Assembly: GCA_001643675.2 (NCBI GenBank) | Contig: LSRY02000007.1 | Span: 124,001-188,000 of the forward strand | Source: Monocercomonoides exilis PA203 | Taxonomy: Eukaryota; Protista; Preaxostyla | DNA: 64,000 nucleotides | Direction: 5' to 3' | Shown here: positions 9,910 to 44,000 of the stretch, one piece after another | Layout of the letters: each line of letters opens with the position of its first letter | Numbering within the stretch: the first letter of the stretch is position 1 | Translations under genes and position numbers: made by a program | Notes under the pieces: generated by a model | Told to the model about the DNA's origin: nothing | Databases searched by the model: none | The model's input: the letters and a program-made list of their open reading frames with translations, nothing else

Positions 9910-12256
9910 ATGTTCAAATTATCATTTACGAAAACATTTTGCACATTTTGCGGGGAATATATTTCGATGAAGCTTGATGGAGATGATTGGATTCTTGGGA
10001 TTAAACGAGGGCTTGCAGACAAGTACGATTTAGACGCACGAGACTTGTATTTCACTCAAAAACAAAAGATCGTACCTGATGACGCGAAAGCAAGGGATAT
10101 CTTTAATGCATGCACATAATTTTTCTTTATTTCTTTATTTCTTTTTATTTTAATATGTATTATGCAAAAAGTATGGAGAAATGGTATATTTGGTGAAACG
10201 AAAATCATTAACCAAAAAAGCTTCCACAACAGCTGAAACGGAAGAAGTTTTACCTAAAATGGAAGAAATAGTTTCATCAGAGTTGCAAAGAGCAAAACCT
10301 TTTTCTGTTCGAGTTACAATTTGCACAGACGAGGCGAAGGGGAAAGTGGTGGTTGTGGAAAACATAAGCCCGGAGATGAAAATTGAGGTTCTGGCTGGAA
10401 GAGTATTTGAGCATCTACACATTCCTGCAGGGAGAATGACAATGGTAACAGAAATGGGAGCAAAAATTTTTGGAACATGGAAAAGTGGACATTTCGAGCT
10501 TCAGGAAAGCTCAGAGGAAAAGCTTGTTTCTAAACTGACTTATTGCGGACAGAGCGGAATAACGTGTCGCATTTATAATTTGATTTCATTCCCCCGACAG
10601 CTTTCGCAAGTTCCTGCACCGATCACATATTCGTCAGCTACTCCACTATCCAATTTGAATCCTTCACAACTTGGATCCGAGACTACCGAACAGGGAACTC
10701 ATGGTACATTTATCCTGCAAGTGAATTATGAGCCAGGAAAGAAAGTATATGTTGAAGCAGAAGGAGAGATGCTGGTGGAAGAATTGAAGAAAAAGCTGGA
10801 GGGAGTGATTGGAACAGCAGTAGAAAAGATGATGCTATTTTGGGGAGAAACTCAGATGGAGGATGATAAATCAATCTCTTCATTTGGTTTCAAGGATGAA
10901 GATAGCATTTATGCATTGGAGAAAAGTAACGGGATGTTTCCCTTGCCGGTCAAAACATTGACGGGAAAGGTCATAAATTTGATGGCTTACAAGTGGATGA
11001 AAGTGAGCGAGCTAAAAGAAAGAATTGCTGAGAAGGATGAAACCCCCGTGAACCTAATGCGTTTGATTTACAACGGCAAGCAATTATCGGATGAGTATGC
11101 GATTTCAGATTACAACATCCAAGAAGGCTCAACTATCTCTCTTGTTTTAAGGCTACGTGGAGGGAAGAGTAAAGAGCTATTTGTGAAGTCGCTCAGAGGG
11201 CAGACGCTGAGGTTTGAGGTGTGGAATGGAGAGACACGAGTGAGAGATATAAAGCGGATGGTGGCAGAAAAAGAAGGGATTCCAGCAGAGCAGCAGAGGC
11301 TATTGTGGGGCGGGAAAGAGCTGAGAGATGAAGTGCTGTTATCCGAATATGGAATGGAAGACAAGTCAACTGCCCATCTGCTGCTCAATCTGAGGGGCGG
11401 ATTCAACATCCGAGTGATGCATTTGGATGGGCGGACAGTGAATGTGGAGGTGGATGGGGCGGAATCGGTGGAGGATGTGAAGCGGAAGGTGACTGCAGTA
11501 GAAGGAGTGGATGTGAGTCAGATGCGGTTGGTGTCTTCGGGGCGGTGGTTGAAAGACTCTCATGTGCTGGAAGATTTCGGGATTGGGCCTGAATCAACGG
11601 TGCATCTGCTGCCAATAAGCAGAGGCGGGATGAGCGGGCCAGGACTTGCCTTTGTGGATGTGACGAAGACGGATGCATTGGTGGAGACGTCATTCAGCAG
11701 CACTGCTCCGCCATGGAGAATGGTGGGGCCTGGAATCAACATCGAAGGGTTTTGCCTCAACGATGGATGCCCAGCGTTTAGCAGGCAGGTGATCTGCCGG
11801 TGGGGGATGAAGCAGTACGATCTCCATGCGAATACTGCATTCTGTCCGTGCTGTCTGGAAAAGATTGTGCCTCTGAAGCCAGGCTTCTTCAGTTGCAAGT
11901 GGCGGATAACAGCAGTGAAAGAGGATGGGACAGTCATGCACATGCCCTGGAAGGAGGCAAGCTATGAAAAGTATACAACATACGACGAGAAGGAAGCTGG
12001 AACAGCCAAGTTCCTGCTGCTGCTTATCGAAGCCAAAGGACAAGAGAGTATTGTGAAGCACCCAACACTGTCATACGATGTGGCTGTGCCGGAGGTGTGC
12101 GGAATTTGCCACAGACACCAGGACAGCAGCTCAGTTCAAGTGTACACGTGTGGGCATGCTTTCCATCGCAATTGTGGGAGCGACTGGGAAGAGACCGTTG
12201 GGGAGTGCCCAGTTTGCCAAATGAAAATGAATAATCAACAGGCGCCTACTGCTTAA
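9910..12256 (+). CDS. Multi-ubiquitin-like-domain protein (about 6 UBLs) with a Cys-rich domain and C-terminal RING-H2; exon 1 9910-10107, exon 2 10172-12256
   Basis: UBL motifs VKTLTGK...RLIYNGKQL...[25 protein letters not shown]...LNLRGG and ...ISRGG. RING-H2 CGIC-x13[10 protein letters not shown]10-CPVC. Upstream exon is UBL-like and in phase with the acceptor AG at 10170-10171. Confidence 0.9.
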
Positions 12257-12521: not shown

Positions 12522-14559
12522 GGGTGATTTATTAACCCGAATATTTTTTTGAAAACCCGAATAAAAAATAATCAAATTTATTTTTGATTATTGTGTATTG
12601 ATTTCGTTTTTTAAAAAATATTAATAATTAATATAATCAACAAGCTCTTGTTTCACAATTTTTCGAATATTTCTTTCTTTTTTTTTCATCATCAGAAAAA
12701 TCATCATTTAAAATTTTCAATGGGTTGAATTTTCTTTTTTTCGGTTATTCATCTTCAAACAAAGCCTTTTCAATTTCTTCATTATCTTTTTCTTCATTTT
12801 TTGACTCTTTTCTTTCATCCTTTTCTTTTTTCCATTCTATTAAGAATTCTTCATCGGTAATTAATTTTCCAAAATAATCAAACCTTTTTGTTCTTTTCTT
12901 CAGAGTTACAGAAGGTTCTTTTGGCAGCTTCGCTAACACTTCGTGCCACTGATGTGACAGTACTCCGCTCTTCGCAAATGATGATTTGATTGTAGAAGGC
13001 AACAAAGAAGTTTGTAAAGCTTGTGGAAGCACATCAGCAAGCGCTTCTCGTCGCAAAACAACAGAAGAAGAAGAAGGAGCTTCATAATTAGCATTTATTG
13101 TCTTTTTAAACACAGCAAACACTCCACGGTCCAAAGGCTGTGCGATGTGAGTGGTGTGTGGCACGAAGGTGACGACATCCATTGAAGAATCAACAAACAT
13201 CTTCCATAAGTCTGGCTGTGCTCTTGAAGAATGGGAATCAAGAAGGAGAAGGCAACGTTCATCATTCTTCTTCAAAGTTTCTCTTCTTTGTGTGATCCCT
13301 GGAAGCAACACTTCTTCAGTATATTTGAGGAATAGCGCTTCAATCATCCAGCCTTCACTTTCACCCCAAACATCTAACTGCGAACTCAGAACAAGGCGTA
13401 GTTCATCTGGCAGTTTCCGACAAGACCATAGAACGACGCTTTTTAGGGAGTAGCCATCAGCTGCAGCTGCAACGACGAGAGTTGCATTCGGCATGTTCAT
13501 CGGTGCTTTGGAGAAACCGGCAGGTATGTCGGAAGGATGGAAAACAAGAGAAGAGAAAGAATCAGAGAGTCGAAGAGAAGATTCATCAATATAAAAGATG
13601 AGAGAGTTCGAATAATGATGTTGATCATGAAGGTTTTGCTGAAGAGTGAAAAATGGAAGAAGAGTTTGTTGATTTGATGCAGAGAGCCTTTGGATGTCGA
13701 CGTTTCGAGGGAGTGAAGATTTAAGCTCGGAGTTCCTTTTGGTGTATTGATAAGGATATGCTTTAGAAATTTTCACTTCTTCGTCTTCTTCATCAAAATC
13801 GTCTTTTTTCCTATCATTTATAACAGTGTTCATCTGAATATATAAAAAAATATATAAAACAACAAATTAAATATTGTGACAAACTAATTTCCTCATTTGT
13901 GCAGCATTGTAACTTGTCCCACTTTCACATTCGATTTTTAGTACACCAAATATCGTTTCCTTTTCTTCCTTATTGAATAATTCTGGTCTTCCATTCTGTC
14001 CTACTTTTCTTCCTTTTTCCACAGCTGCAACTGCTCTATCAATTGCCGAGCGAGTAAATTCCTTCATGTTCGCAGCATCAGCAACCCGAGCTTCTCCATT
14101 GGAAATAATCGTTGCAACACGCTCTAATCTACTTTCAATATGTCGATATTGGAAGGATCTCATTAAACTTCTAATTTTCTTTAATCCTTGTTGTTTTTTG
14201 TTTTCCACAACACTCATTTTAAAATATTTTTTGGTTATGATCATTTTTTTATTTAAAAAAAATTTTTTTTTGAAATGAAAAAAAAATTAAAAAAAAATTT
14301 CAATCAAATTCTAACTTAGTCAGCCCCGTTGCTATTACCTAATCTCCTCAGGGGAGGCACTAATCAGAGATGGAGGAGCTAACCCCCCCATCTCCCCCCC
14401 CATCAGAGATTAGGTATAGTAATTTGATCTTAATTTCTGACTTCTGACTTTTCCTTATATACTCAAAACAATTAATAAAATATGAAAAGTGGGTTGATTA
14501 AACTTATAAATAAAAAAAATGTTCGGGTTAAAAAAAATATTCGGGTTAATAAATCACCC
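12522..14559 (-). mobile_element. Apparently intact pogo/Fot1-like DNA transposon, 2,038 bp
   Basis: Perfect 29-bp TIR GGGTGATTTATTAACCCGAATATTTTTTT, TA on both flanks (12520-12521 and 14560-14561), and a second subterminal AACCCGAA at each end. Confidence 0.93.
12745..14217 (-). CDS. DDE_1 (pogo/CENP-B-like) transposase, DD35D, about 473 aa, one 51-nt intron at 13834-13884
   Basis: N-terminal HTH region with a GRP motif; catalytic FYIDES, LLLLDSHSSR and PHTTHIAQPLDRGVF (35 aa between D2 and D3). A phase-0 GTTTG...TTCAG intron joins the two ORFs. Alternative start at 14244. Confidence 0.9.
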
Positions 14560-16362: not shown

Positions 16363-17943
16363 CTATATTCGTGCAGGTGGAGGCAAAGGATAGGCAACAC
16401 TGGACTTTTTGAGAGAATGCTGAAATGGAGACTGAATCAGCTGTGATGCAGAAGATGAGGGAGAAGAAGAAAGAGAAGAAGAAGATGAAGGAGAAGTTGA
16501 AGCAACCACTTCATCTTTTTCTCTGCTGCTCTTCAATGACCCACCTGCCTCTCCTGCCTCCTGCGCCTCCTTCATCATCATCATCTTCTTCTTCATCTCC
16601 CTCATCTCCTTCCTCTTCTCCGCCACATCTTCACTCAGCAGCATTCCCAGTGATATGTCTGGATATGCACAGGGAGCATTCGCACTCACACAGCCACAGG
16701 GATTGTCTAACGAAGGGAAGGACTCCATCAGCTGCACTGTGCGACGCTTGGCAGTGTGCTGGTGGATGTTGAAGAGAGAAGAGAGAGAGGAAAGAGAGGA
16801 AAGAGAAGAAGAAGAAGAAGAAGAAGAAGAAGAAGAAGAAGAAGAGGAGGAGGAGGAGGAGGAGGAGGAAGATGAGGTGGAACTGCGGAAAAGAGCTTGT
16901 GGAGAAGGATTGGCAGGAGGAGAAGGGAGTTTTGTGAGAGGGTGGAGGAAGACGGAAGAAGAGAGAAGAGAAGAGAAAGTGTTGAAGATGGCAGACACTC
17001 TGAGAGACCAAGTGGAATACGAAGGAGAAGAGAGAGAAATGGGCACAAAGGAAGAAGAAGAAGAAGAGGAAGAGGAGGAAGAATAAGAACTATTTGATTG
17101 CTCATTGTCAGAAGAGCTGGAAGAAGAAGAAGAAGCAGAAGAAGCAAAAGAAGAAGAAGAAGAAGACGACGACGACGAAGAAGATGATGAAGAATATGAA
17201 TTAGAAGACGAAGCAGACGAGTCCGAGCCATCCGCTCCATCAGCAGCAGATGGCGCATTCGACGAGTAGTAGATGAGATATCCCATCGAGTCAACAAGGT
17301 TGAATGTGCAGCAGTCGGCAAAGGGAAGCATCTGCCCACACAGATGGAGCATAGCACAGATGCCCATGATGAGCCCGTCGCCGTAATTCTCCCACAAATT
17401 GATGGGAAAGCATTCACAGGACGGGTTGTATGGCCTGGAGGGTGGGCGAAGAGAAAGCGAGGAAGAAGAAGAAGAAGAGGAGGAAGAAGAAGAGGAAGAT
17501 GGAGAAGAGGAATTTTCTGAAGAAGAAGAAGAAGAAGTTTGAGAAGGATTTGATCCATTTAAAGCAAAGCTATTTTGAGAGGCATAAGAACACGAGGCGA
17601 AAGAATGAGAGGTGTGGAAAGAGGAAATGAGAGCATCGAAGACAGAACAGCAGACTTCATACAACATTTTGGAATGTGCAGAAAGAGAAGAAGAAGAAGA
17701 AGAAGAGGAAGAAGAAGAAGAAGAAAGAGAAGAAGAAAGAGAAGAAGGATTTACAACACCACTTGCACTGAATGAATTAGAGGAAGCAGTGGCAGAACGG
17801 GAAGAAGGCGCAGAAGAAGAGCTTTTGAAGGGAGATTTCAGATGCTGTTCAGGAGAAGTGGGAGGAGGAGAGACAAATGTGTGTTTCGAATGGGGACTCA
17901 GAAAATACTCAAATGGAGAATAGAACAAATGAGAGGAAGAAGA

Positions 17944-17982
<39 letters not shown>

Positions 17983-20900
17983 AGAAGAAGAAGGAGAAGG
18001 AGAAGGAGATGATGATGATGATGACAATGATGAGAATGATTGAGAATATTGATTGGATTCATCATTTGCACCACCAAATCCTTTTCCTCCTTCCACTCTC
18101 ATCTTCCACATCTCCTCCTTCTTCTCCTCTCTCTCCTTTCCGACTGCTTCTGCAATCTCTTCCTTAACATCAGCAATGGCGTGATACAGCCGATGCACAA
18201 AGTATGTGAAGTAAGGTCTTCTGTGAATGAAGTGTGTCTGAAGAGCAGCTGGTGCCAGAGAGAGAGGGAAAAGAGACAGATTCGGATATCTTGATGAGGA
18301 AGAGGAAGAGGAAGAGGAAGAAGGAGAAGTTGAAGAAGAGGTTGGAGTGGTGGGGGAAGGAGAAGAGGGAGAAGAAGGAGAAGAAGGTGAGACGGGGGCT
18401 GTGTGGGATGAGGAGAAAGAGGCAGAAAGATGAGCTTGGGAAGAAGGAGAAGAAGATGACAATGAAGATGAAGATGAAGGAGTTGTAGATATTTTACATG
18501 AAATAGGACGAGAGGAATTTGTTGGAGTTGAAGAAGAAGAAGAAGAGGAAGAAGAGGAGGAGGAGGAAGAAGTGTGAGAAAGAATAGTTGGTGGGGGAGG
18601 AGGAGAAGAAGAGATGGAAGAAGGAGAGGAAGGAGATGTGGAAACAAGAGAAGAGGAAAAATGGGAAGAGAATGAAGACGAAGCTGAAGCTGAAGACGAA
18701 GACGAAGGGGAGTTTGGAGCAGGGGCATAATTAGCAGAAAGTGTCCGAGAAGAAGGAGAAGTGGACAAGGAAGATGAAAACAACGAAACAGAACCAGAAG
18801 AAGAAGAAGAAGAAGAAGAAGAAGAAGCAGAAGCAGATGAAGGAGAGGCAGAAGGAGAGAAGAAGGAATGATAGCTGAGCTTTTCAGGGTCGATGGCTGT
18901 GTGGATGAGCTCGGCAGGAGTGAGGTAGTCTCCAATGGAAGGCTCTTTCGGGTGGCGGAAGCGGATCGAGGCACGCAGCTCAACAGACTTCCTGCTGAAC
19001 GAGGAAGGAGAAGAGATGGAATCAGATGGAGCATCTTTATCTTTATCTTTATCTTTATCTTTCTCTTTCTCTCTTTCTTTCTGTTTGCTGTCTTCTTTCT
19101 CTTTCAATGCTTTTGCTGCTGTGCTTTTCGCTTTCTTGCCCAAAATTGTGTATTCGATCATATCAACACTGTTACTCTTCTCCTTCTCTTTCTCCTTCTC
19201 CCCTCTCCACTTCATCCTCTCCCTCTCCCTCTCCCTCACATTCATCGTCACTGCCTTCCCATACCCCATCGCCCCTGACCCCAAATTAAACATCTCTGAA
19301 TCAACTGCACTTAGCCCTTCATCCAACAGCAGCACCATCCCCAGCAGATTCCCCAGCCTCGTCATCGCACTCGCAAACTTCCTCAGCTCAGTCGAATGAG
19401 CATACAGCTCTTTCCTTCGCATAAACAGCTTCTTGTCCACGCTGCGTGCGTCTGAAGAAGAGGAAACCGTGTTTTCTCTCCCCAAATACGGCAGAGTGGC
19501 TGCCAATGCGACGCCTGCTGTGACGATCTCTTTGACAGCCGATGGCAGCTCATCTGAAAGCGACAGGAGGAAAAACGAGACTTCTTCAGGCTCAATCCAG
19601 CGCAGGAAGGAAAGGAGGTGAGGGGAAGAGGCAAAGAACTGGGTGTTTGTGCCTGTTGACTCGGCAAAAAGAGAAAGAAGATGTTTTGTGAAGAGTCTTT
19701 CTGGTGGAATGCGATTGAAGCGATGGCGCTGCATCCGGACACAATCAGAGAGAAGGCGAAGACAATCGCCAAAGACAGAAGGGAGAGAAGAGAGGATGGA
19801 GTCAGACTGAGAAGAGGAAGAGGAAGAGAATGACAAAGGAGATAAAAACACACTCGTACATCTCGAAGAAGAAGAAGAAGAAGAAGAGAAAGAAGAAGGA
19901 TCAGATGAAGAAGCCATTCCAACTGGATCACCTCCTTTGAGAAGAGATTGAGGTGGAGTAAGCATCATTCCAGGCACAAAGCGCATTGTGTTGAGGTTGA
20001 AGCGCATTCCCTCCACAACATCATTCACCGCCACATCAGCCATCCTCTGAGAGATGACAGAAGAGAAGCAGACGAGAGAGGACTTGCCTGTGCGGGCATT
20101 CATAATGTCCCTCCACGTGTTGCGTGCTTCAACTCTGCGGAAGAGCGACTGGTGGATCTCAAACAGCACACGCAGCAGAATGTCAGCAGCCACAACAGTC
20201 TCCCTCTTTGAGAAGAGAGCACACGCCACCTTCACATTCTCTGTCAGCATGTCTTCGATGCGCTCCACAAGAAGCGAGGAGAAGTCGATGCGGTGGCCGA
20301 CAATCGACACATTCCTGTCCAAAGTGAGCAGACTTGCGAACGGAATGAACGGCGGAGGAAAGCGAGACACGCCTTGCATCTGCTGCTTTCGTGACCGCAC
20401 TGCAAATGAGTCACCCAGCACAACAGAACCAGACAGCATCAGAGAAATCCGTCTGTGCGAAGGGTCGTTGTCACACGCAGCAGACGAGAGGGATCTGTCG
20501 CCCACAATTCCAGTCACACCTGGCGATACAAGAGACAAAGATGAAGAGGCTGTACGCTCCCCAATGCTGCCACTGCCACTGCTGTTATTGTTGATGCTGC
20601 TTCCATCACCTGCTCCATTCACACTGACTGTTCTTTCTCCTCCTCCTCCATTGATGATACTACTGCCTCCACCAACATAGCTTCCATATCCTCCTCCGCC
20701 ACTTCCTCCACTTCCACTGCTGCTGCTTCCATTCAGAGCCAAAAACACTCCACTCCCATTGCCACTTCCATTCCCACCACTTCCTCCTCCTCCTCCTCCT
20801 CCTCCAACACCTGTGATGCCACTCAGCACACTCAAAATGCCTCCCTTCTTCTTCCTCCTCAGTGACAAGCCCATCTCTCCGAACAGCCGATGCTCCGACC

Positions 20901-23783
20901 CCACAAACTTCAGCGAATTCACTCGCTTCGAGTGGCGGAAGATGGCAAACGGAAGCTCCACCCTCAGCTGCTCCATGCCCAATTTAGCCTCTCCTTCTAT
21001 CTCTTCAAACAGAAAACGAGACTTCAGATCTCTCAATGCAACATCTGCAGCGTCTGTGTACAACGATATCATCTGAATGACGTTGTCCATGTCACACACT
21101 CTGTTCTGCGAGGTGTGGTGTGTCAGAATCCAAGGCAGCGAGTCTTCGATCGGAAACTGCGACCTCCCTCTTCTCCTCGCCCGCTCCACGTATTCCTCTC
21201 TAAACCAGAGGAAGCCCAACGAAGAGAGCTGGAGGAGAGAGGCAGAGACGCAGCGGAGCAGAGAAAAGAACTGCAAGTCGCGAAGGAAGCAGAGGAGCTC
21301 CTGCTGGTCAGAGGAGTCGAGGAGAGAAGAGGAGAAGAGAGAGCGGGAGGAGAAAGGGGAGCGAGGGGAGGAGACGAAGGAGAGCACAGAACGGAGGAGG
21401 AAGAGCTGGGTGGGGGTTGGAGGGTGGGTGAGATGAGGGGGAGAGGAGGAAGAGGAAGAGGAAGAGGAAGAGGAAGAGGATGGCTTGGAAGTATTGGAAA
21501 GTGAAGAATCAACAGAAGAAGAAGAAGAAGAGGAGGAGGATGAAGATGAATGAGTGGGAGAAATGCTGAGAGAAGAGGAAGGGAGTGAAAGAGGAGGCGG
21601 AGCAGCTGGTTGGAAAAGTGGAGCTGAAAAGGAAGGAAGCGGACGAGTTGGCACTTGTGGGACAGAACTGTCCACAAAAGCAGAAGAAGTCGTTGGCGAA
21701 AGAGAAACCTGTGGATAAGAAGAAGCATTCGAAGCATTCGAAGAGGAAGAAGAAGGAATATAAGGAGCAGGTGGTGCAAATGACCCAAAATAGTCCAAAA
21801 GAGGATCAGTAACACTTGAGCTTCTGTTATTCTGTTCATCTTCTCTTCTCCTTTCGCTTTCAGATGAGTTGTTGTTGTTGTTGTTGTTGATATCATCAGC
21901 ATCTGTTCGAGGCATTGGAATGCTTTGTGGTGGAACAGGCGAAACTAACACATCTTCTGCCTCATCCTCATCAATAAGCACAACATCATCTGTATTGTTG
22001 TTTTCTTCCTCTTCATCATCGTCATCTTCGTCATCGTCTTTATCCTCTTCCGTTTTTGAATTCCTCATTTTTTGTCTTTCTTTTGTTTTGCTCTCTGAAA
22101 TGCTTCTTTCCATTCCTCCAACAAATTCTCCTCCTTCCTCATTCCCCATCCTCCTTTCTCTCTCTCTCTCTCTCTCCCTCTCCTTCTCCTTCTCTCTCAT
22201 CTCTCTCCTCCTCCTCACCCTCGCCTTCCTCTCCTTTTTGTCCCTCACGCCCATCCCCACCTGCTGCACCACCGCCATCAGCTCTGCCCCTTCCTTCGAC
22301 CTCTTCCCACCTTTCTTCCTCACCTTCTCTGACAGCTTCTCCACCACATACAGACACAAATCTTCCACTTCTCTCATCATCACCTCGTCTGCGGCTGCTT
22401 GGAGTGCCTCTTTCTCCTTCAGCATCTGCCCCGCCAGGCTTTTGATGCACCCAACCACGACTGTCAGTGCTGAGCGCTCTTCCACACTCAGATTGTACCT
22501 TATGCACCGCTCATAATCAGACACCTCTTCTGTCTTCATCTGTTTGAAAGGCAGCCCCGCCGCCTTGTTGATCAGTGCCTCGTCATTCAGTGCTTGCACC
22601 AGCTGTTCATTGGAGGCAGAGAGAGAATATTTGGCTGCCAAGAACTCGATCAGAAAGCGCTTCATGCGGCAGAGGAGGACAAGGGCAGAGAGGGTGAGAG
22701 AGGCAGAGGCCGTGTAGATGTCGATGGAGCGGCTGTTGGATAGGGAATAGCGAATGACACGGAGGAAGACGGGCTGGCGGGAAGAGGCAGAGGAAGAGGA
22801 GGAGGAGGAAGAGGAGTAGGCAGAAGAGAAGGAGGCAGAGAAGGAAAAGGGAGAAGGGAGAAGAGACGGGAAGATGGAGAAAGAAGGAGGAGAGGAAGGA
22901 AGCAGAAGATCAGTCAGAATGGAAGAATTAGATGAATTATTATTATTATTATTTGCAGAAGAAGAAGCAGAAGAAGAAGAGGAATGTTCTGATTGAATGG
23001 AATAAGATCCGCTGGTAGAAGTGATAGAGGAAGAGAATGTTGTTGAAGGGAGAGAAGAAGAGGTACGCGGATTGGGAGGAAGAGGAGGGAAAGAGAAAGG
23101 GACATCATCAATTGGAAGGGGGAGAGGAGAAGAAGAAGAAGCAGATGAAAGATTGTTGAAGGAAGAGGAAGAAGTCAGAGAAGTTGAGGATGAGTGGAGA
23201 CTGCTGGAACGACTGGCTGGTTTGGCAAAAGAAGAAGAAGAAGCAGAAGAAGAAGAAGAAGAAGCAGATTTTGAGTTCTGCATAGCTTCCATGATGACAC
23301 TGGATGAATAAGCATAAAGAGAAGAGAAAAAGGAAGGAGAGGTGGGAGAAGTGGGAGTTTTGGGAGAGGAAGAAGGGGAAGAGGAGGAAGAGGAGGAAGA
23401 AGAGGAAGAGGAAGAAGAAGGAGAAGAAACTTGAGTCAAAGGAGAAGCATTAGAATTGTATGAAGGCAGTCCCATCAGACCTTCCTTGTCAGTCGGTGTC
23501 AGCTTTGCCGAAATGATGCGTTCTCTTTCCATTTTGATTCTCTCCTGCTCTTTCTCTCTCTCACTCACTTTCTTCCCTTTCCTCTCCCTCTCCCTCTCCT
23601 TCCGCTTGTATTCCTTGTTCTCCTTCAGCATCTGGCTGATGTACCCCAATTTTGCTGTAATTGCTGCGGTTGTCCGCTCAAATGCTGCTGCCTTCTGAAT
23701 GAGTGCACGCGCTGCTGGAAGAGGCGCCTCGTTCCAGCGAGACTGCTGCTCAGGCCAGAATTTGCACTGAGAGAGAATTACAA

Positions 23784-30480: not shown

Positions 30481-31015
30481 GAAATGGTAAAGTTGAAATT
30501 TTTTCTTGTCATCATATTTTTTTGCGATGCAAATTCTTTCGTATGTAATTTTCTTTTTGACATTTTGGTTCGGTTTTTATTTGAAAATTCAGCTGTTCAT
30601 TTGTTGTTATAAATTCTTTTTTTTTGGAATTTTTATATTTTTTTTTTCTTTTTCTTTTATTTTTTTAATGATTATCAGCTTTATTTACGAGTTTTTGAGA
30701 TTTTTTGTTGATTGTCTATGTAGAACATACAATTTATGATATTTCTAAATTTGATTGGATTTATGTGTCACACAGTTACTTCAGTTTTTAATATTAGTTT
30801 TTCTTCGTCTAACAATCCTTAGGAATAGGAATTTTTTTTAATTCAGAAACGACTGCCTTTTAATAATTTCTATAATAATGAAAAGCATAATTATAGTATG
30901 AAAGCTAAATGAATTATGAATCAGACTTCAATTAAGAAAAAAAATATTTATCTAAATAATTTATTATATATAATAGTGATCATATCGAACTGTTCTTGTG
31001 CTACAAAAACTTTCA

Positions 31016-34000
31016 ATGATTCATAACTTACAATTATTGCTCAGAATTATTTTTATTGTTGTGTATACATTTGATGCATCAACATTTAGCCTGGATGTTT
31101 ATTTTAACAACACCAAATCGCATGATACAATTCGAAATAATCTTATTGAATTACAAAAAGGGAAATTCATTACAGCAGGTAGAAAATTAGAAGATGGATT
31201 ATTTTCCATTATTGGAGGACCCGATTTATCGACCGTTATCATGTCACCTTCTAAAAATTATCTATTTTCTTTATCAAACTTTTCGTTAACTTTTGATTCA
31301 GTAAAGCTTGTTGGAAACACTGTTACTTCAGTGATTGATCTTGATGCCGCTTCACTGTTAACATTGCGCGATACAACAATTGAAAATCCAATATCTAAAA
31401 CATCAACTTTTTTATCATCTGGAACCGTTAATCTTCGGAATATTTCCCTATCTTTCACTTTTGATCATGATCGCACCATTCGCTCGTTAATAGATTCAAA
31501 AGTCGAAGCAGGAAAGGCAAGCTTAACTTTCTCTGAATTTCGAGATTTGCAAGTTGTGAAAGGATCATCACTCCTGTGTTCTCCAAAATTAAGCAATTCA
31601 ATCGAAAGCTTTGTTAACTTTGAAAATATATCTCGACCTTATTGGGTGAATTCTTTCGAAACAAAGTTTTCTGTAAAATCTAGATCTTTAACACATTCAT
31701 CTCGAATGATAGGATGCGAATGTTTGAACTGCGAAGATGCTTTCTATGGAGTATGTTCAGTTGGTTCAATGGGAAACAAGTTTATTTCTGAAAACTCTTC
31801 ATTTATAAGATCATTCACTACAACAACAAATCAAAGCATAGGTTCAGCACTCCCTGTTTTTCAATCAGGAACAGTAGAATTTTTTGATTGTAACTTTTCT
31901 GCATGCCACCGAACTGCTGAGCCTGGTGGAGGTGGCATTTGCGTGAATGGTTCTTACATTACCTTCAAACTGGAGAGATGCATCTTTGAAGATTGTTATG
32001 TTGAATCAAAAGATAACAAGATTCGAGGTGGTTGTGCGTATGCTGTTTCTCCATTTGGTGATTTTGCGGTGAATAATTGCACATTTCGCAGAGGAGAAAA
32101 CAGAAAAGCGGCATATGGTTGGAGCAATTTTTCACATTCTGGGGGACTGGTGATGATGAACATGACTACATGCGTGATGAGCAACTGCTTGTTCGACAAA
32201 TGCCGCTCAGGATTAGGTGGAGCGCTGAATGTGGAACATCAAAAGGCAGGGACAGTGTTCGATACAAACAACTTCACAGAGTGCGAGGCCTACGGGATGT
32301 ACGGAGGCTGCTTCCACACTTATGGAGCACAAGGCGAGTTCAGCTTTCACAGCTGTCTGTTTCAGGGAAACAAGGCGAAGACACTTGGGGGCGCATTGGA
32401 AATGTGGAATTCAAACGGCCATGGCGCTATGAAAGTGTCGTACTGCTATTTTATTGGAAACAGGGTCGATTCGTCCATGGGAAACGATGTCTATTTGGAC
32501 TCATCGTTCAACAGAGACACAATCAGGCAGCTGTTCATGGCATCGTTTTCGACTTCTGACCGGCCGCATCTATTTTTCTGTCAAGAGTCCACAAATGACT
32601 GTCCGCGAGGCGATGAAGAGTATCAAATTCTACCTTACCCACCGTACAGAAATGTCACTGCGAAGTTTGAGGGAGGTGTGAATGAGTATTACTGCGGCAA
32701 CAACTCCTGGAACGGGATCAAGCCGACGGAAAGCCACATCAGCATTCCCAATATCAATGAAGATCTCACATACTACACCACCACATACATTGAGTGCAAG
32801 ACGATCGAGTTCTCTCTCACGCGGTGGAACCCTTTCATCAACCAGACAATTTACATCTTCGGCGACCTTTTCACAGAGAAGAACCTGTCTGTCGACTGGA
32901 AGATCATCACCATTCGCGGCGAGTCGTTCATCCAGCCCTCGCCAGGTGCTCCTGACCCAGCTGAAGATTTCTCCCTTTCTGTGCCTGCGCCTTCGCCTAT
33001 CAATTCAATCACAGCATCTGACTCAACCACCACAACCAGCCTCTTCAACGTAGACGCTGGAAAACTCCGCTTGCTGGGCGTTGCATTGATCCCAAATAGT
33101 CAACTGAATCTGTTTACAATCAACGAAAATGGGTATCTTTGTGTGCAAGGCTGTGTTGTGCAGCCTACAGTTACTTCTTTTTTGTCAAGTCTTCGCACTT
33201 CGAACATGCCATCTTCTTCTTCTGCTTCTTCTCATTTTTCTGACAAAGTCTTCCACTTTTTCGACCAGTCATCTTCATTCAGCCCGCTTTACACCTCATC
33301 CAATGCGCTCCAGGCAAAGACGCTCTTCCAGCTGTCTGGATGCACTGCCCTCATCTTCAACACAAAATTCGAAACATTCACATTCGGCGACGCTACTGCT
33401 GTGAAATGTCTGGATGTGAAGGAAGTGAGCATCACACACAACAACTTTACTTACCTCAGCCGTTCTGTCTCGTCTGGAGCTGCAATCAACGTGGAGGCCA
33501 CGACGAGTGCACTTTCGTCTGCTGCTGGAACTGCCACTGTCTCTATCGACAGCTGCTCCTTCTCTGACTGCATAACAACAGAGGCATCGAGCACAGAAGT
33601 CGGCGGGAGTGCCCTGTACATCACGCTCAGAGCGAACACTCAGTGGAAAGTGAACGGATCTTCCTTCACAAACTGCCTGGCACCTGTTGCATCTTCGCCT
33701 ACCTCGTCGCTTGCGTCAGACTCGAACGGGAGAGGAGGTGCAATGCGCTTCGTTCTGCTGGGCACGCTCTGCGACTTCGAGATCAAGACACCCACTTTCC
33801 TCGGCAACAACGCCCACCGCGGGCGGAACATCTTCGTGCGCTCTGACCAGCTGGCAGTGGACGTGCGGAACGAAACAGTCCCTTTCTTTGAACACGACCA
33901 GGCCCGCAAGTATTTCCCCCCGTCAGCCATTTTGCCTCCAGAAAGCAACTTCAACCCGAAGGAGCTGTCTGGCTCGCAGAGTGACAAGCCTGAGGCGATT

Positions 34001-37000
34001 CTGCCGCTGGCTGTGTTCTTCATTGAAAAGGACAAATGGATCATGTCATCGAATGAAGATGGCTTTGATGTAGATCATTGCGGATACCTCTTCTTTCCCT
34101 GCGGAACAATAAAACATGCAATTGACCTTAATCCAACAACTTCCACTTCCACTTCAGAATCTTCTTCTCCTTCTCATTCTTCTCGTGTGAATGCAACACC
34201 AGTCAAAACAAGAGTATTCATCTACAAAGGAATTACGATGAGTGAAAAGATCACATTCGATGCTTCGTCCAATGACATTGTGCATTTAGTCGGTGGAGAT
34301 TTCTACAACACAAGATTATCTGATGCTTTTGACCCAAATGTATTTATGGAGCAGCTGAACCCCACAACTGGCAGCTCTTCTTCTGCATCATCTTCAGAAT
34401 GGCAATATCGCGTCTCTTCTCAATCAGCCCCAGAAACCTCTCTTGTGAAAGTGACATCTTCTGCTGCCTTTTTGATTCAAGGCACATCCGCCTCATCTGG
34501 TTTTTCTGCTCCCACGTCGCATTTCCTCGTTGACTGCTTCACTTTCTCCCTTCCGTCCATCCATGAAGTTGCTGCTTCCTCAACAGACTCGCTCTTCAAA
34601 GTCTCCCGAGGAGACAACACAGGCAATGTTCTTCTGCTCATCACCCGCTGCGGTGTTGCAATGCAGAGTGGCGTGTCATCCATTTCGTACCCACTCTTCC
34701 AAGTGCTCGATGGGAAGCTTGTTGTTGGCACACTCACTGTCAGCAACGTCGTGTTCAACGGAGCTCCGTTTGTGTCTGTTGCGCTGGGTGCAGCGTCTCC
34801 TGCAGTCGCCATTCCGCCCACAGCACATTTGGACTCTCTTATTTTCGATTCCACTTCTTCTTCTTCATCTGTTGCAGACACTGTGCTGATTGATGTAGGA
34901 CAGAAATGCAGTGTGATTGTGAACAACTCAAGGATGACTGGGTGTCATCTCGGCAAGTCGAGCTTCATCGGAGCAAACCAGGCATCAAATGTGGTGCTGA
35001 AGAATTCGACTTATCAGAGCGATCAGAATAACAACGGAAACGGTACGTTTGTGAAGGGAAATGCAGTGCAGGATGGGCAGTATGTGGTGGTCGATGGCTG
35101 CACTTTCATCGACTGCAATGCCACCGGAGCGAATTGTGGAGGCGGGTGCGTGTTTGCAAGGCTTTTTGATACAGGGAATTTGACAGTGAAGCATTCTTCA
35201 TTCAGACAGTGCAGAGTGAACCAGGCAAGTGGACGAGGAGGAGCTATTTTGCTAATCTTGGACGACAGTTCCACGGACAATTTTGTATTTTCATTTGACT
35301 ACTTCAAAGACGATGTTGCATTCAAAGGGAAAGACATCTTCATCTACTGCCGATCGCTCATCCGCTGTGCAACCATGGCACGCTTTGACTTTTCAATGGC
35401 ACAGGCAGCGCTGGTCAGAGAGAACTCTCTGTATGGCGTGGGCACTGTGGACTTTCCCACAGACACAAATCTCTTCACCATCTGGGAGTTCAACAGAAGC
35501 ATTGTATATGTTTCGAATGAGATATATGCAGAGGACTTCCCACTTTGCGGATCGGCTGCTTTTCCCTGCCGAAGCGTGGAATATGCAGCCAATCAGGCGA
35601 GCGGAGACTTGCAGCAGATTGTTGTGTGGGAGAAGACGCAGCTGACTACAAAAGTTCCGATGGACGAGAAGAGATTCATTGCACACCCTGGAACAAGAGG
35701 AGAAGTCGCTATTGAACCGGCTGCTTCTGCAGTGCCATCAGGCGATGAAGGTATTTTGCAGGTGACTTCAGCATATATGCTCGTTCAGGACTTGAATGTG
35801 CTTCTTAAAGTGAACATAAAATACAATATTTTAATGAGAGCAGAAGGCATTGACGCAGAAATGGATGTGTTTGGCGTGTCGTTCAAGTTGAATCCAGCTG
35901 ACTATCCGTCTGGCATTCCTACCCCATCTCCTTCTCTTTCCTACTCGATCATTTACATCAATGGGGGCAAAATGACAATGAAGGAGTGCTCATTCAGCAC
36001 ATTTTCGCTATCTTCTCCAATTCAGAAGATTATTTCTGTGATTCCGCCAGAGTCTGTTCCGCATGATCCATCTATTCCTGTCCCTGCTCATCAGGACATT
36101 ACAATCACACACACATCCTTCACAGACATTGCCCGCACTCACATTGCTGATGGCAGTAACGATGTTGCGTGCGTCTTCACTTCATCTTCTTCAACACGTC
36201 TTAATCTCTCTTTGGCAAACTGCTCGTTCGTTCGGTGCATTTCATGGGCTGAGAAGGGAAGTGTGATGAACCTCGATAAATGTGAGGTGTTGATGGAATA
36301 TTGCTTATTTGAAGGAAACGGAGAAATTATCACCTCTTCAAGCGGAAGCGAAATGAGCTCAAATGAAAACGAAGAGGTAGAAACTGCAGGCGAATCAAAT
36401 ACTCAATTCATATTTCCTTCTATTCATTCATCACGTTTCGCGAATCCTGACTCATCTTCGCCTCTTTGTTCTTTTTCTGGCTCGCTTGTGCATGTTTCCT
36501 CATCTCCAAAAGCCACATTCATTCAGACGGCATTTACTCGCTCTCCAAAAGGAGCGTTGACGATTCACAATTCCGATGCGTCATTCACAATGGTGGAGTT
36601 CTCTCAGAATCATCATCCTTCATTTGATGCGAACTATCAGCAGGTTGGACACAACATCCGCTGCTCTGTGGATGCTGCTTCGCTTCCAGCTGGTGTGGTT
36701 GGAGAAGTCACACTGAATTCTCTCAGAAACGGCGATGGCCATCAAATCAACACGTCATTCTGGATGGTGAATGAGGGATGCACTTTAAAGGGGAAGCTGG
36801 CAAGGCAGAGAAAATCACTTCATTTCATTCCCATTCTCAGCAGCATAAATGTTGTTGACGAAGGAGAAGACGTGGATGTGTACAAAGCAGAAATAGAAGG
36901 ATCAAATCTGCTGCCATGCAATGTCACAGGACAGATACGATATTACCACGAAAACCACACGAACGAAACACAAGAAATTGAGATAACAGAATTTGTCAGC

Positions 37001-41077: not shown

Positions 41078-44000
41078 TCATTTGTTCATGCTTTCAATCA
41101 GTTTTCTTGCCTCTGCTGACACACTCAACTCCTCTTCCTCTGACATCATGTTGTATCCAATCGCATCTGACATCGTCACTATCACTGTGCCTGCAGGAAA
41201 GTGCTGGATAAACTCTCTCTTCAGCACATTCAGCTCCACACGCTCGCATCCTCTCTCTGACACGCAGCTCTTCACAACTGCCTCGAATGTGTTCCCTGAA
41301 ACCCCCTTTATGTCTGGCCTCTCCCCATTCACAATCTTCTGCCCAGCCACCACTGCCTCATATTCTCCAAACGGGATCTTCAGGGTCAGGCACTCCCACA
41401 ACATCATCCCAATCGAGAATGAAACGGACTCCTTTGTTGCTCCCATCTTCTTGTTCATCTGCAGCTCTGGTGCCTTCCACCTCAGGCACTCCTTCCTGTT
41501 GTCATCCTCATCCTCAAAGGCTGATGAAGGTGGTGGTGAACCTCGACCATTCCTGTTGGCAGATGAGAAGTCAGAGGAAGATGTGATGATCGTGGAGGCG
41601 GAGGAGATGGATGAGGAATCTGAATCATCTGAAGAGAAGTCGGAATGCTTGGCAATGCAGATGATCATGTGCTCCGAGAACAACACAATGTGAGGACTCA
41701 GATTGGCAAGAGATGACAGCTCGTCTTCTTCATTCTCAAGTGAGTGGAGTGCCCCATTCGCCACCCAGAACAACACCTGGGCAGCTGTGTGTTCTCTCTC
41801 CTGCAAAGTGCCTATCGCCATCTCCTTCTTCTCATTCCTTCCATGAAGCAGCATGAACAGCGAATCTCTCAGATCCACTATCAGCTTTTCAAACACTGAT
41901 GAACAGGCAATTGCATCCACCAGATTCGACATGGATGAGGTGGTTGGACACAAACTCTCTGATCGAACAAATGTTGAATCTGAATCAGTTGTTGAAGTGG
42001 ATGAAATGGAAGGTGATGGTGATCTCTTTCTCGTTTCCTCCTCAACTTCTTTCTCATCAACTTTCTCCAATGCCCATTCAGGAATCTTATCTGAATCCCT
42101 TCCCAAGATATATTCAGTTGATCCACTCTCAGACAGAAGATGCTCAGATGACTCCGAATGTCCCAAGCTTTTCTCATAAACTCTCTTCTTTATCCTCTCT
42201 TCATTCTTCTTTTCAGCCTCCCTCTCTGCTCTCCTCCACTGCTCTTCAGGAGACATCTCCATCGTAACCATCTCAAATGCCTTTGGGTCCTTCTTCACTG
42301 TGTCATTCACAATCTCTTCTAATTCTTCAGTTCTCCTCTTTTGCTTTTTCCATCGAACCGTGACAATTATGGACACAATCAGAACAATAAGGAATAAAAC
42401 AACGAATATAACTGCAATAACAAAGGCCCATGATTTTCCATCTTTTCCTCCTTCAACGATTCTTTCATCTCCTTTTGATTCTGAGATGCTCTTGTTCTTC
42501 AGAATGAATGCCTCAGTTGCGGATGGAGAATCAGCACTCCCAAACAGAACACACACCCTCACTTCTGCTTCACTTGTCACACCTTCAATTGTTTCCACAG
42601 GAACAGACCCATGCACCTCTTCTTCTGAAATGAAACCGCTTGAATCAAACAAATGCTTTTCAACCACTTCCTCATCTCCTTCTGCTGCAACTGTTTCGAA
42701 TGAGAGATTGCAAGGGAGGAGAAGTGATCCTCTGAACACAACATTCACCTTCTCCCCTGACTTTTCAGCTGACACACTCTCCACCTTCGGGATGAAAAAG
42801 GGAGATGCCCTTTCTCCTGCAATCCCTTCCAATGAACATCCTCCATCCAATATCCACAACGAGGAATTATCTTTCACTCCATCACCTCCCTTCAAACTCA
42901 CAACACTCAATTCTGACGAGCCTTCACACAGGATGTTCCTTCTTGCTGATGGATAATTCTGAATTGATGGATTGTTTCCCTCAAATTTTCCTTCAGATAT
43001 CTCAACACATCCACCTGATAACGAAAGCCCTCCTTTCTTCGAGTTGCTGATTGTGGTGTCTTTCATTGTCACATTGCTTGACGTCACATCCACAACAGAT
43101 CCATTCCAACCACATAATTGGTTAAGTTCTTTTTCATTTTCTTCTTCATCTTCTCCAAAAGCATTTTTCTTCTGATGGCTGACTGGATCATCTGTTGTTT
43201 TGCCATCAAACAGACACGACACAACAGACACATCTGAACTGTCTGAAACAGACAACTGGCTTCCTTTCTCAGCTGAAAGCAGACAAAAAGAAAATGAACA
43301 ATTAATCAGATTCACATTTGATTTGTCACTCTCAATCCTCACAACACTCCTGTTGTTATTGCTGTTCTCATTTGATGAAATATTCTCAAAAACTGCTGCA
43401 GATATTCTGAGACTTTCCTTATCTTCATCATTTCTTCTTCCATTTCCATTCATGTTCAGCTCTTCCTTGTTCGTTGAGATCAGACAGCCATTGTTCAATG
43501 AGATGTTGGAACAGTTCATTTTTTCAATCGAGACGCTCGAACTCGATCCTATTGCAACAACATCAGCTGTTGATGTGAGAGACTCCAGAGTCATTTGGGA
43601 AAGCACAATTTCTGATTCATCAGAAAATAAAAGCAAGGATTTTGCAAAAGACAGCCAGCTGAATGATGTCTCACTCATCTTCAGAACTCCTCCCCAAACA
43701 GCCATCACATGTGAATCCAGCTCCAACAAGGCATCGCCTGCTGTGAATGTGCACTGAGACACTTCCAACGATCCATATGATTCAGCGAATACAGCTGAGT
43801 GTGCTGCCTCAAACGAAGAAGCAAATGATATCAGGCAGTTGCGAACTGTGCAATCCTCCTCAAACAGAACCACACTCTGGGCATCTCCTGTGTGTGGAAT
43901 GGTTGTGCTCAGCTGGACTGTTGCCTGCTGCTTTGTCGAAGGCAGGATGGACAGCCCATGCACAGTTGTCTCTGAGAGGAAGGTGGATGAGGTGTTGATG

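What the first reader, a model, noticed from the sequence alone, without database searches (positions are those of the whole stretch)
9910..12256. Self-contained modifier-plus-E3 polyprotein: six divergent ubiquitin-like domains, three ending in RGG, fused to a RING-H2
Seen: about six tandem non-identical UBLs. The first three lack a diglycine; the last three end LRLRGG (about 11163), LNLRGG (about 11402) and ISRGG (about 11629), followed by MSGP..., a Cys-rich domain and a RING-H2. Known: DUBs cleave after RGG, as in polyubiquitin and Ub-ribosomal protein precursors. Inference: processing would release a four-domain UBL ending LRLRGG (ISG15/FAT10-like but longer), two single-domain modifiers and a free E3, all in 1:1 ratio from one gene. 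The RGG units differ at key positions: K48-equivalent K, K, R (the last a possible chain terminator) and residue 72, an E1 selectivity determinant, R, N, I. This could be a lineage-specific conjugation cassette.
Basis: partly seen in the sequence, partly recalled or inferred. Interest (0 to 1): 0.8.

Follow-up and report, generated by a model that had tools for sequence, protein, structure and literature searches.

The report
Ubiquitin-like repeats fused to RING ligase
This two-exon gene of the protist Monocercomonoides exilis encodes four certain and two probable ubiquitin-like domains, an undescribed zinc-binding beta domain and a RING-H2 ligase. It belongs to a large, unstudied family of eukaryotes and giant viruses whose best-conserved feature is a ubiquitin-type Gly-Gly just before the ligase half, so the protein is probably made as a precursor that is cut there.

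Summary
The gene (exon 9910-10107, GC-AG intron, exon 10172-12256, + strand) encodes the 760-aa protein annotated 'putative ubiquitin' in Monocercomonoides exilis. Pfam and profile comparison confirm four ubiquitin-like domains (UBLs); the two N-terminal ones are only probable.

The cysteine-rich domain ('X') has no Pfam, NCBIfam or solved relative, yet matches 1,246 cluster representatives. In the best 151, the usual layout is UBL(GG)-X-RING-H2. The UBL next to X is only about 58% identical to ubiquitin, but its Gly75 and Gly76 are its most conserved positions (0.96, 0.98), and the next residue is never Pro. That fits cleavage releasing an X-RING ligase.

It is not lineage-specific: matches in Barrevirus and Pandoravirus cover X plus RING.

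Against the full 'cassette':
- An intact, divergent M. exilis paralogue has lost all three GG.
- One Streblomastix homologue lacks GG.
- This gene's last UBL ends PISRGG, not LRLRGG.
- Conservation among the close paralogues is weak evidence.

No RNA or protein evidence could be obtained. The scan found this family before, on a paralogue elsewhere in this genome (s1-464201).

The parts
9910..10107 (+). Exon 1 (residues 1-66), holding most of the probable UBL 1
   Evidence: Open frame from the ATG at 9910. The annotated protein P0001 reads ...DIFN|YGEM.... Residues 28-66 are strongly conserved in ten paralogues.
10108..10171 (+). 64-nt phase-0 intron with a GC donor (GCATGC...) and an AG acceptor after a T-rich tract
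   Evidence: This is the only junction that gives the annotated protein. Paralogues have an intron at the same site: GT-AG in three copies, GCATG in the C46 copy.
10172..12256 (+). Exon 2 (residues 67-760 plus the TAA stop)
   Evidence: Open frame; 100% match to P0001.
9931..10204 (+). Probable UBL 1 (residues about 8-77, spans the intron); no diglycine
   Evidence: hhalign against a ubiquitin profile: 43%, P 2.5e-4, 66 columns. Strand and helix order fits a beta-grasp, but in a low-confidence model. Atlas neighbours are all ubiquitin-type. No Pfam hit.
10295..10588 (+). Probable UBL 2 with an insertion (residues about 108-205); no diglycine
   Evidence: hhalign: 55%, P 1.2e-4, but only 36 columns. 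No Pfam hit. Atlas neighbours are ubiquitin-type at TM about 0.4.
10715..10921 (+). UBL 3 (residues 248-316); ends ...YALEKSNGM, no diglycine
   Evidence: Pfam ubiquitin E 1.7e-7, 31.4 bits, above the 25.4 cutoff. hhalign 96%.
10943..11164 (+). UBL 4 (residues 324-397), 46% identical to M. exilis ubiquitin; tail LVLRLRGG, followed by K
   Evidence: Pfam 72.2 bits; hhalign 100%; key residues; identity.
11174..11401 (+). UBL 5 (residues 401-476), 39% identical to ubiquitin; tail LLLNLRGG, followed by F
   Evidence: Pfam 65.6 bits; hhalign 99.7%.
11402..11629 (+). UBL 6 (residues 477-552), 39% identical to ubiquitin; tail LLPISRGG, followed by MSGPGLA then FVDV
   Evidence: Pfam 57.4 bits; hhalign 99%. 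The RGG here is invariant in ten paralogues.
11630..12073 (+). Domain X (residues 553-700): an all-beta domain with an invariant four-Cys site (C594, C599, C624, C627) and a nearly invariant fifth Cys (C641)
   Evidence: No Pfam, NCBIfam or solved-structure sequence relative. 1,246 cluster representatives match at E <= 1e-3. AlphaFold2 model of X+RING: pLDDT 94.9, pTM 0.86. Invariant columns.
12098..12220 (+). RING-H2 finger (residues 709-749, C3H2C3)

Best explanation
The gene encodes a RING-H2 ubiquitin ligase of a widespread, unnamed family with the layout UBL(GG)-X-RING-H2. Here the family has grown to about eleven M. exilis copies, and this copy has six UBLs.

Shown: the domain order; the family; the strong conservation of the diglycine before X; and a confident model in which X and the RING form one compact unit.

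Inferred: the protein is made as a precursor. A ubiquitin- or UBL-specific protease cuts after the Gly-Gly that precedes X, as in ubiquitin-ribosomal protein fusions, and frees an X-RING ligase that starts MSGPGL. X then serves as the substrate-binding or regulatory part, and the RING recruits an E2.

The two internal RGG sites (after U4 and U5) have the right sequence to be cut too. That would give a four-domain UBL ending LRLRGG and single UBLs, but this is less certain. Whether any released UBL is conjugated is unknown.
For: - Family and layout. Of 135 relatives with upstream sequence, 126 have GG at the junction and 116 have a ubiquitin domain directly upstream of X. Of all 151, 100 have a RING-H2 downstream of X.
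- The X-proximal UBL is diverged (median 58% identity to M. exilis ubiquitin, none at 90% or more). Even so, G76 (0.98), G75 (0.96) and L73 (0.89) are among its most conserved positions, against a mean of 0.55 elsewhere. The residue after GG is never Pro.
- Where relatives have several UBLs, only the X-proximal one usually keeps GG: 2 of 31 internal UBLs end in GG.
- RGG before X is invariant in ten M. exilis paralogues.
- The short paralogues have a canonical LVLRLRGG directly before X.
- The RING-H2 is complete. X+RING model: pLDDT 94.9, pTM 0.86.
- Established knowledge: ubiquitin fusions with an intact RGG tail are cut in eukaryotic cells unless the next residue is Pro.
Against: - There is no direct evidence of cleavage.
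- In this gene the UBL next to X ends LLPISRGG. It differs from ubiquitin at positions 71, 72 and 73, which the family usually keeps.
- The intact C80 paralogue (784-aa open frame, 43% identical, same domain order) has no GG at any of the three sites. Streblomastix P0036 has none before X. The array therefore also works, or at least persists, uncut.
- U1-U3 never had a diglycine.
- The RING linchpin position is Q here, against R in the family consensus.
Confidence: 0.5

Rival explanations
1. The protein stays whole. The UBLs act in cis, as in Parkin, HOIL-1L or UHRF1, or as proteasome- or shuttle-binding handles as in Rad23 and Dsk2. They would regulate the RING or dock the ligase to ubiquitin-binding partners. 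The diglycines are leftovers of the ubiquitin ancestry and part of flexible linkers.
For: - The C80 paralogue and Streblomastix P0036 keep the UBL array, X and RING without any GG.
- U6 has a non-canonical PISRGG tail, and R74 is P or C in U4 of some paralogues.
- M. exilis has other head-to-tail UBL arrays without GG, for example a 681-aa open frame on C1.
- GG conservation among the close paralogues is statistically weak.
- The residue after GG is Gly in 63 of 83 family members, which would also suit a flexible Gly hinge.
Against: - Family-wide, G75 and G76 are the most conserved residues of a UBL that is otherwise only about 58% like ubiquitin. L73 and R72 are also kept. A mere hinge would not need them.
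- Internal UBLs of multi-UBL relatives lose GG, whereas the X-proximal one keeps it.
- Pro never follows GG.
Confidence: 0.33
2. All three RGG sites are cut. The released four-domain UBL and the two single UBLs are new modifiers that are activated by an E1 and attached to targets, possibly by the co-encoded X-RING ligase, in fixed 1:1 amounts.
For: - All three GG are kept in the five long paralogues, although R72 and R74 vary.
- The family-wide pairing of a diverged UBL bearing a conserved RLRGG tail with a ligase in one gene fits a modifier and its ligase.
- R42, I44, L8 and H68 are moderately kept in the family UBL.
Against: - No E1, E2 or conjugate evidence.
- Cleavage would leave Lys and Phe N-termini on U5 and U6, which are destabilising under the N-degron rule (established knowledge).
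- U6 has I72 and S73, where ubiquitin needs R72 and L73 for E1 and protease recognition (established knowledge).
- The C80 paralogue lost all sites.
- In relatives, internal UBLs almost never end in GG.
Confidence: 0.14
3. A decaying or non-expressed duplicate of a multigene family, with no function of its own.
For: About a dozen copies exist, one with an in-frame TAG (C27) and one a fragment (C47). The donor site is GC rather than GT. Expression was not checked.
Against: The 760-codon reading frame is intact across two exons. All Zn ligands of X and the RING are present. The protein is 64-76% identical to its paralogues, with conserved cores. GC-AG introns are a known minor class of spliceable introns, and the C46 copy shares this donor.
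Confidence: 0.03

Closest known systems
Ubiquitin fusion precursors (ubiquitin-L40 / UBA52 and ubiquitin-S27a / RPS27A; protist fusions to actin, P1, NiSOD and 'zinc ring finger', PMC6332867)
   Same: A ubiquitin-type domain ending in RGG is joined directly to an unrelated protein, and the next residue is not Pro. Such fusions are cut by deubiquitinases. Ubiquitin-RING finger fusions were listed for Bigelowiella and Guillardia.
   Different: The UBLs here are only 39-46% identical to M. exilis ubiquitin, so they are not a source of ubiquitin; the genome has separate polyubiquitin genes. The partner is a ligase with an undescribed domain X. The algal fusions (145-273 aa with one or two ubiquitins) are too short to hold X plus a RING.
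ISG15 and FAT10 (tandem-UBL modifiers ending in GG)
   Same: Several UBLs in one chain with a C-terminal LRLRGG-type tail. The U1-U4 product would resemble them.
   Different: Four domains rather than two, made as part of a ligase precursor. No known E1 or E2. Processing and conjugation are untested.
Parkin, HOIL-1L and UHRF1 (ligases with an uncleaved N-terminal UBL)
   Same: A UBL at the N-terminus of a zinc-finger ubiquitin ligase. The GG-less C80 paralogue and Streblomastix P0036 look like this type.
   Different: Those UBLs lack a diglycine junction. Their catalytic parts (RBR, or PHD-SRA-RING) are unrelated to X-RING-H2.
RING-H2 ligases of the RNF38 / Arkadia / RNF165 / RNF13 / HRD1 type
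   Different: The match covers the RING only. Domain X has no counterpart in these proteins.
Giant-virus 'ring and ubiquitin domain proteins' (Barrevirus A0A3G4ZQ93, Pandoravirus salinus S4W648)
   Same: Foldseek E 3e-19 and 7e-19 over 211-220 columns covering X plus RING, at 27-34% identity. They have the same family layout.
   Different: Uncharacterised as well, with different numbers of UBLs. Their sequences were not examined here beyond the fold match.

Membership tests
Ubiquitin family domain (Pfam PF00240) | Match to the family model above the gathering score, for each claimed domain | tested here: met
   U3 31.4, U4 72.2, U5 65.6 and U6 57.4 bits, against a cutoff of 25.4.
Ubiquitin family domain (Pfam PF00240) | The same, for the two N-terminal domains U1 and U2 | tested here: inconclusive
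   No Pfam hit. hhalign 43% and 55%, P about 1e-4. The AlphaFold2 model is poor, pLDDT 42. Atlas neighbours are all ubiquitin-type but at TM 0.35-0.44.
RING-H2 finger (Pfam PF13639 / PF12678) | C3H2C3 ligand pattern and a model match above the gathering score | tested here: met
RING-H2 finger (Pfam PF13639 / PF12678) | E2-dependent ligase activity | not testable with these tools
   Needs a biochemical assay. The linchpin position after the last Cys is Q here, and R in the family consensus.
Unnamed UBL(GG)-X-RING-H2 family | Domain X with the invariant four-Cys site and the FVDV and APxWR motifs | tested here: met
   phmmer: 405 cluster representatives at E <= 1e-10. Invariant and nearly invariant columns are present in P0001.
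Unnamed UBL(GG)-X-RING-H2 family | A UBL ending in Gly-Gly within about ten residues upstream of FVDV | tested here: met
   [14 protein letters not shown]. 126 of 135 relatives have GG at the junction.
Unnamed UBL(GG)-X-RING-H2 family | A RING-H2 about 55-100 residues beyond the end of X | tested here: met
   RING at residues 709-749, X ends at 700. 100 of 151 relatives have a RING-H2 downstream.
Ubiquitin fusion precursor (UBA52 / RPS27A type) | N-terminal moiety is ubiquitin itself (near-identical sequence) | tested here: not met
   U4, U5 and U6 are 46%, 39% and 39% identical to M. exilis ubiquitin. Family median is 58%, with none at 90% or more.
Ubiquitin fusion precursor (UBA52 / RPS27A type) | RGG tail joined directly to the partner, next residue not Pro | tested here: met
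   The next residues are K, F and M in this gene. In the family it is never Pro.
Ubiquitin fusion precursor (UBA52 / RPS27A type) | Cleavage after Gly76 in vivo | not testable with these tools
   No proteomic or biochemical data.
Conjugated UBL modifiers (ISG15 / FAT10 / NEDD8 type) | Activation by an E1 and isopeptide attachment to targets | not testable with these tools
   Only the sequence motif could be checked. R72 is present in U4 but is N in U5 and I in U6.
Uncleaved UBL-ligases (Parkin type) | The UBL-ligase junction lacks a diglycine | tested here: not met
   RGG is present before X in this gene and in ten paralogues. The feature is met only by the C80 paralogue and Streblomastix P0036.

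The most novel reading that the evidence does not exclude
The whole UBL(GG)-X-RING-H2 family, found across eukaryotes and in giant viruses, encodes a private modifier together with its own ligase in one reading frame. The diverged UBL, or in M. exilis a four-domain UBL plus two single ones, is cut off at the conserved diglycine. It is then attached to targets by the co-translated X-RING enzyme. The nearly invariant fifth cysteine of X might act as a relay site. This would be a self-contained conjugation unit that has gone unnoticed because it is annotated as 'ubiquitin' or 'polyubiquitin'.
Probability: 0.15. Interest if true: 0.85.

Novelty: new variant of a known kind. Interest (0 to 1): 0.6.

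Why it matters
Natural ubiquitin fusions are known mostly for ribosomal proteins. Here the partner is a ubiquitin ligase with a domain that has no Pfam model, no solved relative and, as far as my searches reached, no literature. Yet the domain matches more than a thousand protein clusters, in many eukaryotic groups and in giant viruses.

The diglycine is the most conserved part of a UBL that is otherwise diverged. That makes a concrete, cheap experiment worthwhile: is the junction cut, and what does the released UBL do? If the UBL is a dedicated modifier, this would add a new branch to the ubiquitin-like systems. If it is only a cleavable chaperone, or a handle acting in cis, it is still a new way of building or controlling a RING ligase.

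M. exilis offers a natural comparison set. It has long forms with three GG sites, short forms with one, and one paralogue with none.

Tried and rejected
2. AlphaFold2 of the N-terminal 325 residues with six paralogues. The model was poor (pLDDT 42), so it cannot settle U1 and U2.
3. A known fold for domain X.
   - A profile search of PDB sequences gave only chance-level centrin hits, E about 0.03.
4. Pattern search of viral contigs with a small X alignment. There were 82 pattern hits and none was confirmed; the larger alignment had no usable stretch. Giant-virus members were found instead by fold search of BFVD.
5. Literature. Three full-text searches found only a descriptive listing of ubiquitin-RING finger fusions in two algae. 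Nothing turned up on domain X or on this family.
6. A word search from a canonical member gave few named relatives: one diatom protein.
7. The idea that the UBL moiety is simply ubiquitin, a ubiquitin-supply gene. Rejected: 39-46% identity here, about 58% in the family, and separate polyubiquitin genes exist.
8. X as a self-cleaving cysteine protease. Considered and set aside, because no conserved histidine accompanies the conserved cysteines.
9. An alternative GT donor at 10072. Rejected because it would delete twelve residues that are conserved in the paralogues.

Full report
**What is there**

The window comes from Monocercomonoides exilis. The best database match to the 691-aa open frame at 10181-12256 (+) is a 760-aa M. 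exilis protein annotated 'putative ubiquitin', P0001, at 100% identity.

The extra 69 residues come from an upstream exon. Exon 1 is 9910-10107, a 64-nt phase-0 intron is 10108-10171, and exon 2 is 10172-12256.
- The donor is GC (GCATGC) and the acceptor is AG after a T-rich tract.
- Three paralogues have a GT-AG intron at exactly the same site. The closest paralogue (contig C46) also has GCATG.
- Exon 1 residues are strongly conserved among the paralogues, so the two-exon model is sound.
I did not pursue this by other means.

**Domains**

Pfam finds four ubiquitin stretches and a RING-H2. Piece by piece:

| Part | Pfam result |
|---|---|
| U3 | 31.4 bits |
| U4 | 72.2 bits |
| U5 | 65.6 bits |
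| U6 | 57.4 bits |
| RING (zf-RING_2) | 38.8 bits |
| U1, U2, Cys-rich domain (553-700) | no hit |

Profile-profile comparison with a ubiquitin alignment gives U3 96% and U4-U6 99-100%. U1 reaches only 43% (P 2.5e-4, 66 columns) and U2 55% (P 1.2e-4, 36 columns). An AlphaFold2 model of residues 1-325 from six paralogues was poor (pLDDT 42). Its strand and helix order still fits beta-grasp units. The ten nearest ESM Atlas structures for residues 1-215 all carry ubiquitin-type domains, at TM 0.35-0.44. I therefore count four certain and two probable UBLs.

- Tails LRLRGG|K, LNLRGG|F and ISRGG|M.
- K48-equivalents K, K, R.
- Residue 72 is R, N, I.

U4, U5 and U6 are 46%, 39% and 39% identical to M. 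exilis's own ubiquitin. That ubiquitin is encoded elsewhere, as ordinary polyubiquitin.

**The cysteine-rich domain is the key**

Domain X (residues 553-700) has no Pfam, NCBIfam or solved-structure relative by sequence. An exhaustive HMMER search nevertheless found 1,246 cluster representatives at E <= 1e-3 and 405 at E <= 1e-10.

In the best 151:
- 135 have at least 30 residues upstream of X.
- 126 of those 135 have GG at the junction, typically LVLRLRGG, then 0-8 mostly Gly residues, then F[VA]DV.
- 116 of those 135 have a recognisable ubiquitin domain directly upstream.
- 100 of the 151 have a RING-H2 55-100 residues beyond X.

So the canonical family layout is UBL(GG)-X-RING-H2, about 350-400 aa.

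Taxa on record include Oomycota, Mucoromycota, Rotifera, Euglenozoa, a diatom and the oxymonad Streblomastix. A fold search of viral models found Barrevirus and Pandoravirus salinus proteins covering X plus RING, at E 3e-19 and 7e-19.

**Is the diglycine meaningful?**

Across 83 full-length X-proximal UBLs from organisms other than M. exilis:
- Median identity to ubiquitin is 58% (range 24-79%, none at 90% or more).
- G76 (0.98) and G75 (0.96) are the two most conserved positions of the domain. L73 is 0.89 and R72 is 0.82, against a mean of 0.55 for the rest.
- The residue after GG is Gly in 63 of 83 and never Pro.

In relatives with several UBLs, only 2 of 31 internal UBLs end in GG. Streblomastix P0040 has nine UBLs, and its X-proximal UBL and one internal UBL end in GG. 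This points to selection on the UBL|X junction itself. Combined with the established fact that ubiquitin fusions with an intact tail are cut in eukaryotic cells, it makes a precursor that releases X-RING the best reading for the family.

**What speaks against the full cassette in this gene**

- M. exilis has twelve loci with X: five long forms like this one, three short forms on C17 with U5-U6 missing, a shorter C17 copy (409-aa frame), one copy with an in-frame TAG (C27), one fragment (C47) and one divergent copy on C80.
- The C80 copy has an intact 784-aa frame. It is collinear from U2 to the RING at 43% identity, and its Pfam domains are intact. It has lost GG at all three sites (RAQTG|V, RKKGW|F, SRCGW).
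- Streblomastix P0036, the closest homologue found outside M. exilis, also lacks GG before X.
- In this gene the X-proximal tail is LLPISRGG, which differs from ubiquitin at positions 71-73.
- In the long forms, R74 is P or C in U4 of three paralogues, and M in U5 of one.
- Among the five long paralogues, 55% of the U4-U6 columns and 16 of 23 Gly columns are invariant. Keeping six Gly there is only weakly informative, roughly 0.03-0.12 by chance.
- Cutting after U4 and U5 would expose Lys and Phe, which are destabilising N-termini (established knowledge).

One point does fit selection at the junction. RGG directly before X is invariant in all ten aligned paralogues. The short forms carry a canonical LVLRLRGG there.

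**Conclusion and odds**

The architecture and the family membership are secure. My estimates are:

| Reading | Probability |
|---|---|
| At least the GG-X junction is cut, freeing an X-RING ligase | about 0.5 |
| The protein stays whole, with UBLs acting in cis | about 0.33 |
| Dead duplicate | about 0.03 |

The feature is not lineage-specific. What is special to M. exilis is the expansion to six UBLs and three consecutive GG-ended units.

An earlier follow-up in this scan, on a paralogue elsewhere in this genome (s1-464201), reached the same family-level reading. My analysis was done before I saw it. Its giant-virus remark was a lead that I tested and confirmed.

**Limits**

- There is no expression or protein evidence.
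- U1 and U2 are unresolved.
- X was not folded alone.
- Taxon names are known for only a few family members.
- The ubiquitin reference used was a repeat of a tick polyubiquitin-like protein. It differs from M. exilis ubiquitin at nine positions. The key figures were recomputed with M. exilis ubiquitin and barely changed.

Noticed in passing
window 12745-13833 (-): A 362-aa open frame about 500 bases downstream of the gene matches Pfam DDE_1 (DDE superfamily endonuclease, E 3.3e-12). It looks like a pogo/Tigger-type transposase gene.
   Followed up: partly
L005 1276-3630 (-) = G000:C80:192275-194629: A divergent paralogue: 784-aa open frame, 43% identical, with the same order U2-U6-X-RING. It has lost the diglycine at all three junctions and carries an (EK)n insert in U6. 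It is a natural 'uncleavable' version.
   Followed up: yes
L008 (G000:C1:1992700-1995100), with a second inverted copy near C1:2078210-2080237; also C10:1705494-1707740: M. exilis has other long open frames made of about nine head-to-tail UBLs that lack Gly-Gly ends (681 aa on C1, 951 aa on C10). The genome gave 104 ubiquitin-like matches in all.
   Followed up: partly
P0006-P0009, P0012, P0014 (short paralogues on G000:C17 and C27): If the short forms are cut after RGG, they would start GSCPSH, or RSCPSH in P0012. Gly1 with Ser5 and a nearby Cys resembles an N-myristoylation/palmitoylation motif (from my own knowledge). Family-wide, the residue after GG is Gly in 63 of 83, far more than cleavage alone needs.
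   Followed up: no
window 10108-10171; L002 (G000:C46): The intron of this gene and of its closest paralogue has a GC donor (GCATG). Three other paralogues have GT at the same site. The annotated model of the C46 copy (P0035, 1285 aa) uses another donor and looks like a fusion with an upstream gene.
   Followed up: partly
G000:C27:863444-863878 (-) and G000:C47:1651339-1651473 (-): One family copy has an in-frame TAG inside X and another is a 45-residue fragment. These are probably decaying copies.
   Followed up: no
window 16363-23649 (-), 30998-38650 (+), 41078-49249 (-): Three very long open frames of 2,428-2,723 aa lie in GC-richer stretches of the window. They were not examined.
   Followed up: no
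ESM Atlas cluster, Rotifera: A rotifer cluster of NAD(P)+-arginine ADP-ribosyltransferase proteins (PF01129) matches domain X structurally: TM 0.60 (Atlas's own model) and 0.45 (my model) by query, over about 115 residues. X may also occur fused to an ADP-ribosyltransferase.
   Followed up: no
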